A DNA stretch of 63,467 nucleotides, filler included, from Octopus bimaculoides (taxonomy: Eukaryota), in NCBI RefSeq assembly GCF_001194135.2. It is 5 parts of 5 records of this genome, joined end to end, with 100 filler letters (N's around TTAATTAATTAA, not from the genome) between each part and the next. Parts side by side here need not be neighbours in the genome. Positions count along the whole stretch, not along the records: positions 53,171 to 59,335 come from NW_026354956.1; 4 more parts are not named here. One strand, 5' to 3'. Numbering within the stretch: the first letter of the stretch is position 1; each line of letters begins with the position of its first letter. The notes beneath the pieces were generated by a model. That model did no database searches. It saw only the letters and a program-made list of their open reading frames with translations, and was not told the DNA's origin. Shown here in pieces: positions 57,030 through 58,158 of the stretch. A program made the position numbers and the translations under genes.

Positions 57030-58158
57030 TTCTTGACCACAACTTAGTGTTTTTCTCGCCTCTCATGCCATCTATCATTTTTGTAATTGACCTTTGAGGT
57101 GCTTCAATTTTCATGATACCACAGTGGACAACAGTACTCTAGGTGCGGTCGGGCAAAAGTAGAGAAGAGAAGGATAATGGTGTGAACGTCTCTCGACTAG
57201 AAAGTTCTAAGAATCCTGGAACACATTCTGCGGGCCATGTCAACATTGCTGTTTGTATGAGCGGCCCAGCTTATGTTGTTGTCCACAATTACTTCCAAGA
57301 CTCTGATGTTGTTGGATGCCATGAGTCTTTCACCTGAAAGAAGGGAGTATGGGAGTTTCAGGTTATCCTCTCTTCCGAAGTGGAATAACTCACATTTATC
57401 CTTGTTCAGTAGCATTTTATTCTTTATCGCCCATTGGATGACAGCCAGTAGACCTCATTGAAGGCATGCCCGGTCGCGAAATTTTTATTTTTCCTACGGG
57501 AGTTCCAGACCTCAGTTATGAACTCATTTGCATAAAGCCAATCAGAGCTCAACTATCAAACTGATTTATGAGCGCATAATCAGTGATGGGCGATAAGATA
57601 ATATCGCTTGGATGAGGAATGACCATGCACCTTTTCTCTTTTAATAATGCTTGTTGTTCTTGCTCTTGTTTCAACCATGGCTGCTTCTGCGTAGTTAATT
57701 GTGTTGTTGCTTACTTCGTAAACCAGTAAGGCGAAAGTGTTGCTAGCACCTCACCCTCTACCCTCATTTTTTCCAGCGTTATCTTTACCATATGGGGCCC
57801 TAAGAAAATCAGATAATAGGCATAGGTGCAAATCTATCTAATAATTTGTCACCTTCTAAAATCAGGCATAACTTGGCGATCGGTCAACTTACAACACCGT
57901 TCTTCGTCATGAGTTTATTTGGTAGAGTGTGGTTGTTAACTTAGCAACAAGATCAAGGTGAGCTCTGATTGGGTATATGCAAATGAGTTCATTACTAGGG
58001 TCCGAAAATCTATTGGGAAAACAATTTTCGATGCCCGGTCAGCCACTTCATTGATGAACCTCTGGATCTTGGAATCATCTGCAAAGATTCATATGTTACT
58101 GTGCTTGATGATGTCAGTAATGTCATTGATATAGATGATGAAAAGAAGTGGGCCCAAA
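57030..58158 (-). mobile_element. CR1-clade LINE RT fragment interrupted by a TIR element
   Basis: LGPLLFIIYINDI...IFADDSKI (58158-58041) continues in frame into CLQ*GLLAVIQWAIKNKMLLNKDKCE and FARPHLEYCCPLW once 57476-58030 and one TSD copy are removed. Confidence 0.88.
57476..58030. mobile_element. 555-bp non-autonomous DNA transposon with long TIRs and 9-10 bp TSD (Mutator-like by TSD length)
   Basis: TSD ATGCCCGGTC at 57466-57475 and 58031-58040. TIR core GACC..AGT.ATGAACTCATTTGCATA...CCAATCAGAGCTC at 57506-57550 and 57960-58004. Confidence 0.88.

What the first reader, a model, noticed from the sequence alone, without database searches (positions are those of the whole stretch)
57466..58040. 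Long-TIR, 9-10 bp TSD mini-transposon carrying an octamer + CCAAT module in both TIRs
Seen: a 555-bp insert in a CR1 RT frame; removing it and one ATGCCCGGTC copy restores the frame. Each TIR has ATTTGCAT followed 4 nt later by CCAATCAG (57526-57542; mirrored at 57968-57984). These motifs are invariant while neighbouring TIR bases differ. Knowledge: ATTTGCAT is the POU/Oct site and CCAATCAG fits the NF-Y consensus; this pair drives vertebrate histone H2B promoters. 9-bp TSDs with long TIRs typify Mutator-like elements. Inference: a family that could spread paired Oct/NF-Y promoter or enhancer modules; alternatively the motifs are simply transposase-binding sites.
Basis: partly seen in the sequence, partly recalled or inferred. 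Interest (0 to 1): 0.7.

Follow-up and report, generated by a model that had tools for sequence, protein, structure and literature searches.

The report
Small cut-and-paste transposon in octopus LINE
A 555-base non-coding DNA transposon, probably Mutator-like, sits inside a dead LINE retrotransposon in an octopus-type genome. The Oct and CCAAT-like words in its inverted ends are real, but they are more likely the element's own binding or promoter sequence than a proven host regulatory module, so this is an ordinary finding.

Summary
A 555-bp insert (57476-58030) is flanked by a perfect 10-bp direct repeat, ATGCCCGGTC. It has about 78-bp terminal inverted repeats (TIRs) that are about 80% identical. 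It interrupts a LINE reverse-transcriptase frame on the minus strand, and removing the insert plus one repeat copy restores that frame. The restored frame aligns without a gap to an Octopus sinensis LINE protein.

Both arms carry ATTTGCAT, then 4 nt, then CCAATCAG. These motifs lie inside a larger conserved block of 17 + 14 identical bases, so the conservation is not specific to the motifs. With a single copy the contrast with the outer TIR is only modestly significant (permutation P about 0.01-0.035). AATCAG, the 3' part of the "NF-Y site", recurs four more times inside the element without the CC (family-wise P about 0.009). That favours a reiterated element-specific binding motif.

The order and spacing do not match an H2B promoter. 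No second copy and no autonomous partner could be retrieved, because no eukaryotic genome, Dfam or Repbase search was available. Mutator membership therefore rests on TSD length and TIR length alone.

Verdict: a real MITE-like non-autonomous TIR transposon, probably Mutator-like. The regulatory-module idea is untested. Low interest.

The parts
57466..57475 (.). Left target-site duplication ATGCCCGGTC (or 9 bp, TGCCCGGTC, 57467-57475)
   Evidence: Perfect 10-nt direct repeat D4. The sequence occurs once in the paralogous LINE copy.
57476..57553 (+). Left terminal inverted repeat, about 78 nt
   Evidence: Ungapped arms 57489-57554 / 57956-58021 are 80% complementary. The gapped alignment reaches the tips.
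57518..57551 (+). Conserved inner TIR block, left arm: ATGAACTCATTTGCATA-AAG-CCAATCAGAGCTCA. It holds the octamer (57526-57533) and CCAATCAG (57538-57545).
   Evidence: Exact pattern match in both arms, with 0 matches expected by chance. The block has 32/35 identical columns against 24/42 in the outer TIR.
57554..57956 (.). Non-coding interior, 403 bp. It contains four extra AATCAG/CTGATT copies at 57561-57566 (-), 57578-57583 (+), 57807-57812 (+) and 57860-57865 (+). The first two form a small palindrome, 57561-57583.
   Evidence: The longest stop-free stretch is 56 codons. A six-frame translation has no relative among 5.8 billion proteins. AATCAG enrichment has family-wise P about 0.009.
57957..58030 (-). 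Right terminal inverted repeat, about 74 nt
57959..57992 (-). Conserved inner TIR block, right arm. On the + strand: CTGATTGG 57965-57972 and ATGCAAAT 57977-57984.
58031..58040 (.). Right target-site duplication ATGCCCGGTC
56900..57465 (-). Downstream (3') part of the interrupted, decayed LINE reverse-transcriptase ORF. This is the host element of the insertion. The lower boundary is approximate.
   Evidence: Frame restored after in-silico excision. Pfam RVT_1 hit. Octopod LINE homologues.
58041..58158 (-). Upstream part of the same LINE RT frame (LGPLLFIIYINDITD...IFADDSKIQRFINEVA), cut off by an assembly gap at 58159

Best explanation
This is one copy of a short, non-coding, non-autonomous cut-and-paste DNA transposon (MITE-like). 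It integrated into an already inactive LINE reverse-transcriptase sequence in an octopod genome.

Shown: a TIR-bounded, non-coding segment sits at a site whose 9-10 bp target sequence is duplicated on both sides, as staggered cuts followed by repair would leave it.

Inferred: the cuts were made by a transposase supplied in trans by an unseen autonomous relative. The TSD length and the 74-78-bp TIRs point most to the Mutator (MULE/MuDR) superfamily. The strongly conserved inner TIR block, about 43-77 nt from each tip, is most likely a cis-sequence the family needs. It could be a subterminal transposase-binding site comparable to the ~32-bp MURA site inside maize Mu TIRs. It could also include part of the parent element's inward-reading TIR promoter. 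AATCAG would be a reiterated recognition word. The resemblance to Oct and NF-Y sites is real at the sequence level, but there is no evidence here that it is functional.
For: - Perfect 10-bp TSD and about 78-bp TIRs.
- Precise restoration of the LINE frame on excision, and an ungapped paralogous empty site in O. sinensis.
- No coding capacity.
- A hairpin-forming transcript, z = -5.9.
- The inner block is conserved beyond the motifs: 32/35 against 24/42 matches, scan P about 0.01-0.035.
- AATCAG occurs 6 times in 555 bp against 0.53 per kb in about 67 kb of the piece's flanks and the fetched loci. Four copies lie outside the TIR blocks, family-wise P about 0.009.
- Literature: MULE TSDs are 8-11 bp with long TIRs, including animal examples with 74-bp TIRs (PMC6446971). 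MURA binds a conserved ~32-bp motif within the TIR, and MuDR TIRs carry promoters and cell-cycle enhancer motifs (PMC3310237). Octopus vulgaris has 21 recently active Mutator families and 65 MITE families (PMC13282606).
Against: - Only one copy is known. Family membership, copy number and per-column conservation are untested.
- No autonomous element or MURA-like transposase was found.
- The termini (G/T)CGAAA are not a recognised Mutator signature, and I could not compare them with Repbase or Dfam.
- The 10-bp repeat could be an 8- or 9-bp TSD extended by chance. I estimate about 16% for 8 bp. That would admit Merlin or, less well, hAT.
- The significance of the inner-block conservation is modest, and its boundaries were chosen after seeing the data.
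- Perfect consensus matches to two well-known factor sites 4 nt apart are improbable a priori. ATTTGCAT occurs at 0.07 per kb and CCAATCAG at 0.06 per kb in comparable DNA. A transcription-factor role therefore cannot be dismissed.
Confidence: 0.55

Rival explanations
1. The octamer plus CCAAT pair is a working transcription-factor module, bound by a POU-domain factor and NF-Y. It would act as the promoter of the autonomous parent, retained in the short derivative, and so be scattered through the genome as a portable promoter or enhancer.
For: - Perfect ATTTGCAT and CCAATCAG in both arms at identical 4-nt spacing.
- Both words are rare in comparable DNA.
- The match extends to CTCATTTGCATA. 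From my own memory this equals 12 of the 13 bases of the H2B-specific box CTCATTTGCATAC.
- Precedent: MuDR TIRs contain inward promoters and cell-cycle enhancer motifs (PMC3310237).
Against: - The order and spacing differ from H2B promoters, and no TATA-like element sits at the expected distance in either arm (H2B architecture from my own knowledge).
- Conservation covers 35 contiguous bases rather than the two cores.
- The extra AATCAG copies lack the CC needed for a CCAAT box.
- There are no chromatin, CAGE or expression data and no additional copies.
- This copy lies in a dead LINE.
Confidence: 0.17
2. The element belongs to a TIR superfamily other than Mutator. Candidates are Merlin (8-9 bp TSD) or hAT (8 bp TSD lengthened by chance matches at the junctions).
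For: - The TSD length is ambiguous between 9 and 10 from one copy.
- The chance of an 8-bp TSD appearing as 10 is about 16% by my calculation.
- Merlin and hAT families are present in octopus (PMC13282606).
- Short reiterated subterminal motifs such as AATCAG are classically described for hAT and CACTA elements (my own knowledge).
Against: - None of the possible termini (GCGAA, CGCGA, TCGCG) fits the hAT YARNG pattern (my own knowledge).
- Merlin TSDs are given as 8 bp (PMC10045372).
- A 10/10 perfect repeat is most simply read as a 9-10 bp TSD, which is the Mutator range (PMC6446971).
Confidence: 0.25
3. The motif matches and the better-conserved inner block are coincidence. The two arms have simply diverged unevenly, and two familiar words happen to lie in the part that survived.
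For: - Only two sequences, the two arms of one copy, are compared.
- A longest identical run of 17 has P about 0.05, and the scan P is about 0.01-0.035, not overwhelming.
- The motifs were recognised after the fact from a very large vocabulary of known sites.
Against: - The a priori joint chance of these two 8-mers within a few bases in a 78-nt arm is of the order of 1e-5 at the measured background rates.
- The AATCAG reiteration is independently significant.
- The TSD is intact while the outer TIR parts differ by about 40%. This suggests the arms were already unequal at insertion, so the identical block reflects constraint in the family.
Confidence: 0.2

Closest known systems
Non-autonomous Mutator-like elements (MULEs/MuDR superfamily), including animal MULEs such as Spectre and Phantom
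   Same: TSD of 9-10 bp, within the 8-11 bp range. TIRs are long for an animal DNA transposon at 74-78 bp (Spectre: 74 bp). No transposase of its own. The superfamily is present in molluscs and in octopus (PMC6446971, PMC13282606).
   Different: No MURA-like transposase partner was found. The termini were not matched to any described MuDR family. The TIRs are much shorter than the 100-500 bp of plant MULEs, and the two arms are only about 80% identical.
Maize Mu/MuDR TIR architecture (MURA-binding site plus TIR promoters)
   Same: A roughly 32-35-bp highly conserved block lies inside, not at the tip of, the TIR. Both TIRs carry sequence that could drive inward transcription. The MuDR TIR holds cell-cycle enhancer motifs, and an Oct/CCAAT pair is likewise associated with S-phase histone genes (PMC3310237; the histone link is my own knowledge).
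   Different: There is no sequence similarity and the kingdom is different. Binding and promoter activity are entirely untested here.
MITEs (miniature inverted-repeat transposable elements)
   Same: Under 800 bp, with TIRs, a TSD, no ORF, and a hairpin-forming transcript.
   Different: A high-copy homogeneous family, which is part of the usual definition, was not demonstrated.
Vertebrate histone H2B promoter module (Oct-1 octamer/H2B box plus NF-Y CCAAT boxes)
   Same: Perfect octamer with H2B-box-like flanks (CTCATTTGCATA) and a CCAATCAG that fits the NF-Y consensus on its 3' side.
   Different: In H2B promoters CCAAT lies upstream of the octamer, tens of bases away, and the octamer abuts a TATA box (my own knowledge). 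Here the octamer precedes CCAAT by 4 nt, no TATA follows, and the pair sits in an inverted repeat of a mobile element.
Merlin and hAT DNA transposons
   Same: TIR elements with 8-9 bp TSDs, both present in octopus. hAT elements have reiterated subterminal short motifs.
   Different: The observed repeat is 10 bp (or 9). The termini do not fit the hAT pattern. The TIRs are longer than is typical for hAT.

Membership tests
Mutator-like elements (MuDR superfamily) | Target-site duplication of 8-11 bp, typically 9 | tested here: met
   Perfect 10-bp direct repeat, with a 9-bp reading equally possible. The range comes from PMC6446971 and PMC3310237.
Mutator-like elements (MuDR superfamily) | Long terminal inverted repeats | tested here: met
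   74-78-nt arms with 57/78 columns identical. This is within the 18-613 bp listed for animal MULE groups (PMC6446971, Table 1).
Mutator-like elements (MuDR superfamily) | An autonomous relative with the same ends encoding a MURA-like DDE transposase (Pfam MULE / Transposase_mut) | not testable with these tools
   No eukaryotic genome search was available. The element has no protein homology. None of the roughly 62 kb of fetched DNA (two octopod loci plus an ENA contig of unknown organism) carries the ends.
Mutator-like elements (MuDR superfamily) | Repbase rule for non-autonomous elements: same TSD length and terminal positions 1-11 alignable to a classified family (PMC4455052) | not testable with these tools
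   Repbase and Dfam were not available. The termini (G/T)CGAAA(A)TT are recorded for later comparison.
MITE | Short (under about 800 bp), with TIRs, a TSD and no coding capacity | tested here: met
   555 bp. TIR and TSD. Longest stop-free stretch is 56 codons. No protein relatives.
MITE | Multi-copy family of similar elements | tested here: inconclusive
   There were 0 further copies in the 6-kb piece, in 20.5 kb of O. sinensis, in 20.7 kb of Argonauta or in a 21-kb ENA contig. There were 0 pattern hits in JGI metagenomes, GTDB genomes or IMG/VR. None of these samples the source genome adequately.
H2B-type Oct-1/NF-Y promoter module | Consensus octamer ATTTGCAT and a CCAAT box with NF-Y-type flanks | tested here: met
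   Both are present and identical in both arms.
H2B-type Oct-1/NF-Y promoter module | Arrangement: CCAAT upstream, octamer proximal, TATA box a few bases downstream of the octamer (my own knowledge; primary paper PMC367078 not held) | tested here: not met
   The order is octamer, 4 nt, CCAAT. No TATA-like element lies within about 30 nt downstream in either orientation.
H2B-type Oct-1/NF-Y promoter module | Factor binding and transcriptional activity | not testable with these tools
   This needs EMSA, ChIP, ATAC, CAGE or reporter assays.
CR1-clade LINE (the interrupted host element) | RT domain placed in the CR1 clade by phylogeny | not tested
   Only Pfam RVT_1 and octopod LINE homologues were shown. 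CR1 families are abundant in octopus (PMC13282606).

The most novel reading that the evidence does not exclude
An octopod Mutator-like family uses a compact composite of a POU-octamer (H2B-box-like) site and an NF-Y CCAAT site in both TIRs as its own promoter, which would be cell-cycle- or germline-tuned. This would parallel the cell-cycle enhancers in maize MuDR TIRs. Its short derivatives would then have seeded the octopus genome with paired, inward- and outward-facing Oct/NF-Y modules that can be co-opted as promoters or enhancers.
Probability: 0.1. Interest if true: 0.55.

Novelty: new member of a known kind. Interest (0 to 1): 0.22.

Why it matters
If the motif pair proved functional and the family abundant, it would be a clear invertebrate example of a DNA transposon spreading a defined two-factor regulatory module. 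It would also be an animal parallel to promoter-bearing Mu TIRs. That would bear on how transposable elements shaped the unusually repeat-rich cephalopod genomes. As it stands, the locus is a routine nested-repeat structure: a MITE-like element inside a dead LINE next to a dead mariner. Its main use is to mark relative insertion order and to give a clean TSD and empty-site example for classifying an octopus TIR family.

Tried and rejected
1. Six-frame translation of the whole element, concatenated, was searched against 5.8 billion proteins to fish out other copies or a captured gene fragment. No hit at E <= 0.01.
2. Exact-pattern scans with the conserved TIR core gave 0 hits. These covered JGI metagenomes (two patterns), GTDB genomes and IMG/VR. 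These collections hold essentially no cephalopod DNA.
3. I fetched DNA around LINE homologues: O. sinensis L001, Argonauta L003, and ENA contigs L002 and L004. Sensitive blastn found no related element.
4. The neighbouring mariner fragment was searched to pin down the species and obtain more loci. It returned only snail and metagenome relatives and no octopus proteins.
5. Full-text search for the TIR core strings in papers gave nothing.
6. I tried to obtain mollusc MULE transposase sequences from the supplement of PMC6446971 to look for an octopus autonomous partner. The stored alignment is truncated, extremely gappy and lacks the mollusc rows, so I abandoned this.
7. Rfam and tRNA scans gave nothing in the element. 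The mir-297/mir-466 sub-threshold hits elsewhere are CA/TA microsatellite artefacts.
8. The bacterial-type promoter/terminator scan is irrelevant to a eukaryote and was disregarded.
9. The primary H2B promoter paper PMC367078 is not held, so the H2B architecture is cited from my own knowledge.
10. The 11-nt perfect inverted match between the LINE flank (57424-57434) and the element (57586-57596) was rejected as chance. About 0.3 such pairs are expected in 1.5 kb.

Full report
**Observation.** A perfect 10-nt direct repeat, ATGCCCGGTC, lies at 57466-57475 and 58031-58040 and brackets a 555-bp segment, 57476-58030. The ends of that segment are inverted repeats. The ungapped core is 57489-57554 against 57956-58021, 66 nt and 80% complementary. 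A gapped alignment carries the repeat to both tips, giving 78 columns, 57 identical, and one 4-nt indel near the tip. Each arm carries ATTTGCAT, then 4 nt, then CCAATCAG. On the left these are at 57526-57533 and 57538-57545. On the right they are mirrored at 57977-57984 and 57965-57972.

**The interrupted LINE frame.** Deleting the segment and one repeat copy joins the flanks into one minus-strand reading frame: LGPLLFIIYINDITD...IFADDSKIQRFINEVADRACLQ*GLLAVIQWAIKNKMLLNKDKCELFHFG.... This frame hits Pfam RVT_1. It aligns without a gap across the junction to Octopus sinensis LOC115227543 at 61% identity over 154 residues. At the DNA level that paralogue reads GACCGAACAT where the window, after excision, has a single GACCGGGCAT. 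This is a paralogous empty site, and the insertion, its borders and its duplication are not in doubt. The frame carries several stops, so the LINE copy was already decaying. I did not test whether it belongs to the CR1 clade.

**Host and surroundings.**
- The best relatives of the LINE are from Octopus sinensis and Argonauta hians, so the piece is from an octopod cephalopod. The species was not determined.
- The piece is 37% G+C. It is full of CA/TA microsatellites and has three internal runs of N, which look like assembly gaps.
- Upstream, at about 56390-56860 on the + strand, lies a decayed mariner-type transposase N-terminus. It hits Pfam HTH_48, and its best relatives are 54-59% identical, including a land snail. 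It stops near where the LINE 3' end begins.
- The locus is therefore a stack of dead repeats, and the short element is the most recent layer.

**Anatomy of the element.** It has no coding capacity. The longest stop-free stretch is 56 codons, and a concatenated six-frame translation has no relative among 5.8 billion proteins. As RNA it folds into a long hairpin closed by the TIRs, -168.5 kcal/mol with z = -5.9. The TSD can be read as 10 bp or as 9 bp (TGCCCGGTC). The 9-bp reading makes both termini NCGAAA and matches 8 of the first 11 terminal positions instead of 7. One copy cannot settle this.

**Are the motifs special?** The identical part of the two arms is larger than the motifs. It is ATGAACTCATTTGCATA (17 nt), a 3-nt variable patch, then CCAATCAGAGCTCA (14 nt), about 43-77 nt from each tip.
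- The inner block matches at 32 of 35 columns and the outer part at 24 of 42. Shuffling mismatch positions and scanning gives P about 0.01, or 0.035 if the indel counts as one event. The longest run of 17 has P about 0.05. The contrast is real but modest, and it is not motif-shaped.
- The TSD is intact while the outer TIR differs by about 40%. The arms were therefore probably already unequal at insertion, and the identical block reflects constraint within the family.
- AATCAG, the 3' part of CCAATCAG, is the most frequent hexamer of the element, with 6 occurrences. Four lie outside the TIR blocks, at 57561 (-), 57578 (+), 57807 (+) and 57860 (+). Among the 21 hexamers of the conserved blocks this is significant family-wise, P about 0.009. 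The background rate is 0.53 per kb in about 67 kb made up of the piece's flanks and the fetched loci.
- The extra copies read A/TAATCAG, so they are not CCAAT boxes. Two of them form a small palindrome just inside the left TIR. This looks like a reiterated element-specific recognition word.
- On the other side, ATTTGCAT (0.07 per kb) and CCAATCAG (0.06 per kb) are rare in comparable DNA. Their adjacency is not trivial a priori, although it was noticed after the fact.

**Search for more copies.** This was the decisive test and I could not run it properly. No eukaryotic genome, Dfam or Repbase search was available.
- The TIR core has no exact match in JGI metagenomes, GTDB genomes or IMG/VR.
- There is no related sequence in the rest of the piece. 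None turned up either in about 62 kb fetched around LINE homologues from O. sinensis, Argonauta and an ENA contig.
- None of the core strings appears in the text of open papers.
- The mariner search gave no octopus loci to widen the sample.
- Copy number, consensus, TSD distribution and the autonomous partner remain unknown.

**Mechanism.**
- *Shown:* a TIR-bounded, non-coding segment sits in a LINE copy at a site whose 9-10-bp target sequence is duplicated on both sides.
- *Inferred, superfamily:* mobilisation was in trans by a DDE transposase that made staggered cuts 9-10 bp apart. The Mutator superfamily is the most likely, because 8-11-bp TSDs with long TIRs are its published hallmark. Animal MULEs with about 74-bp TIRs exist (PMC6446971, PMC3310237). 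Octopus vulgaris carries 21 recently active Mutator families, 65 MITE families and 49 unclassified TIR families (PMC13282606, Table 1).
- *Inferred, conserved block:* the subterminal block most likely serves the element itself. In maize Mu, MURA binds a conserved ~32-bp motif inside the TIR, and MuDR TIRs also contain the inward promoters and cell-cycle enhancer motifs (PMC3310237). A transposase-binding site and a retained promoter remnant are both precedented and are not mutually exclusive. I put about 0.55 on Mutator, about 0.6 on "cis-site used by the element", and about 0.17 on a working host-factor (POU/NF-Y) module.

**Comparison with the H2B module.** The words match, and the octamer flanks (CTCATTTGCATA) even resemble the H2B-specific box as I recall it. 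The arrangement does not match. From my own knowledge, H2B promoters place CCAAT boxes upstream and the octamer next to the TATA box. Here the octamer precedes CCAAT by 4 nt and no TATA follows. A survey of histone promoters lists Oct-1 and CCAAT among human core-histone motifs (PMC1794435). The primary paper I wanted for the geometry is not held.

**Verdict.** The transposon and its 9-10-bp TSD are established. The Mutator assignment is plausible but rests on two generic features. The regulatory-module idea is untested and slightly disfavoured by the AATCAG reiteration and the motif geometry. The element is best filed as a new, or possibly already catalogued, member of a known kind, a MITE-like non-autonomous TIR element in an octopod genome. 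Interest is low unless a genome-wide analysis shows an abundant family with motif-specific conservation and chromatin or expression signal.

Noticed in passing
window 56390-56860 (+): Decayed mariner-type transposase N-terminus. It hits Pfam HTH_48, includes ...KFVPKLLSADQK..., and has one frameshift and several stops. Best relatives are 54-59% identical and include the land snail Bradybaena similaris. It is truncated about where the LINE 3' end begins, which suggests the LINE inserted into the mariner.
   Followed up: partly
window 53171-56350 and 58878-59335: Very dense CA/TA/TG microsatellites and three internal runs of N, which look like assembly gaps (54719-54876, 55930-56254, 58159-58877). 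The gap at 58159 cuts off the 5' part of the LINE RT. Sub-threshold Rfam hits to mir-297, mir-466 and mir-3149 here are microsatellite artefacts (all far below gathering scores).
   Followed up: yes
window 57561-57583: Small imperfect palindrome CTGATTTAT-GAGCGC-ATAATCAG immediately inside the left TIR, made of two of the reiterated AATCAG words. The right end has no counterpart.
   Followed up: partly
window 57827-57833: A third partial octamer copy (TGCAAAT, 7 of 8) in the interior of the element. One extra 7-mer is within chance expectation.
   Followed up: partly
window 57424-57434 and 57586-57596: An 11-nt perfect inverted match (TTATCGCCCAT / ATGGGCGATAA) between the LINE flank and the interior of the element. 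About 0.3 such pairs are expected in 1.5 kb, so I judged it chance.
   Followed up: yes
window 57466-57475: The insertion target ATGCCCGGTC is 70% G+C in a 37% G+C region. This could hint at a GC-rich target preference, but one site proves nothing.
   Followed up: no
L004 (ENA ERZ25073835 ctg56093, 97.5 kb): A contig from a so-called metagenome assembly carries LINE genes (Exo_endo_phos_2 plus RVT_1), a Kringle protein and a 7tm_1 receptor. It is therefore animal host DNA, with a LINE RT 49% identical to the one in the window.
   Followed up: no
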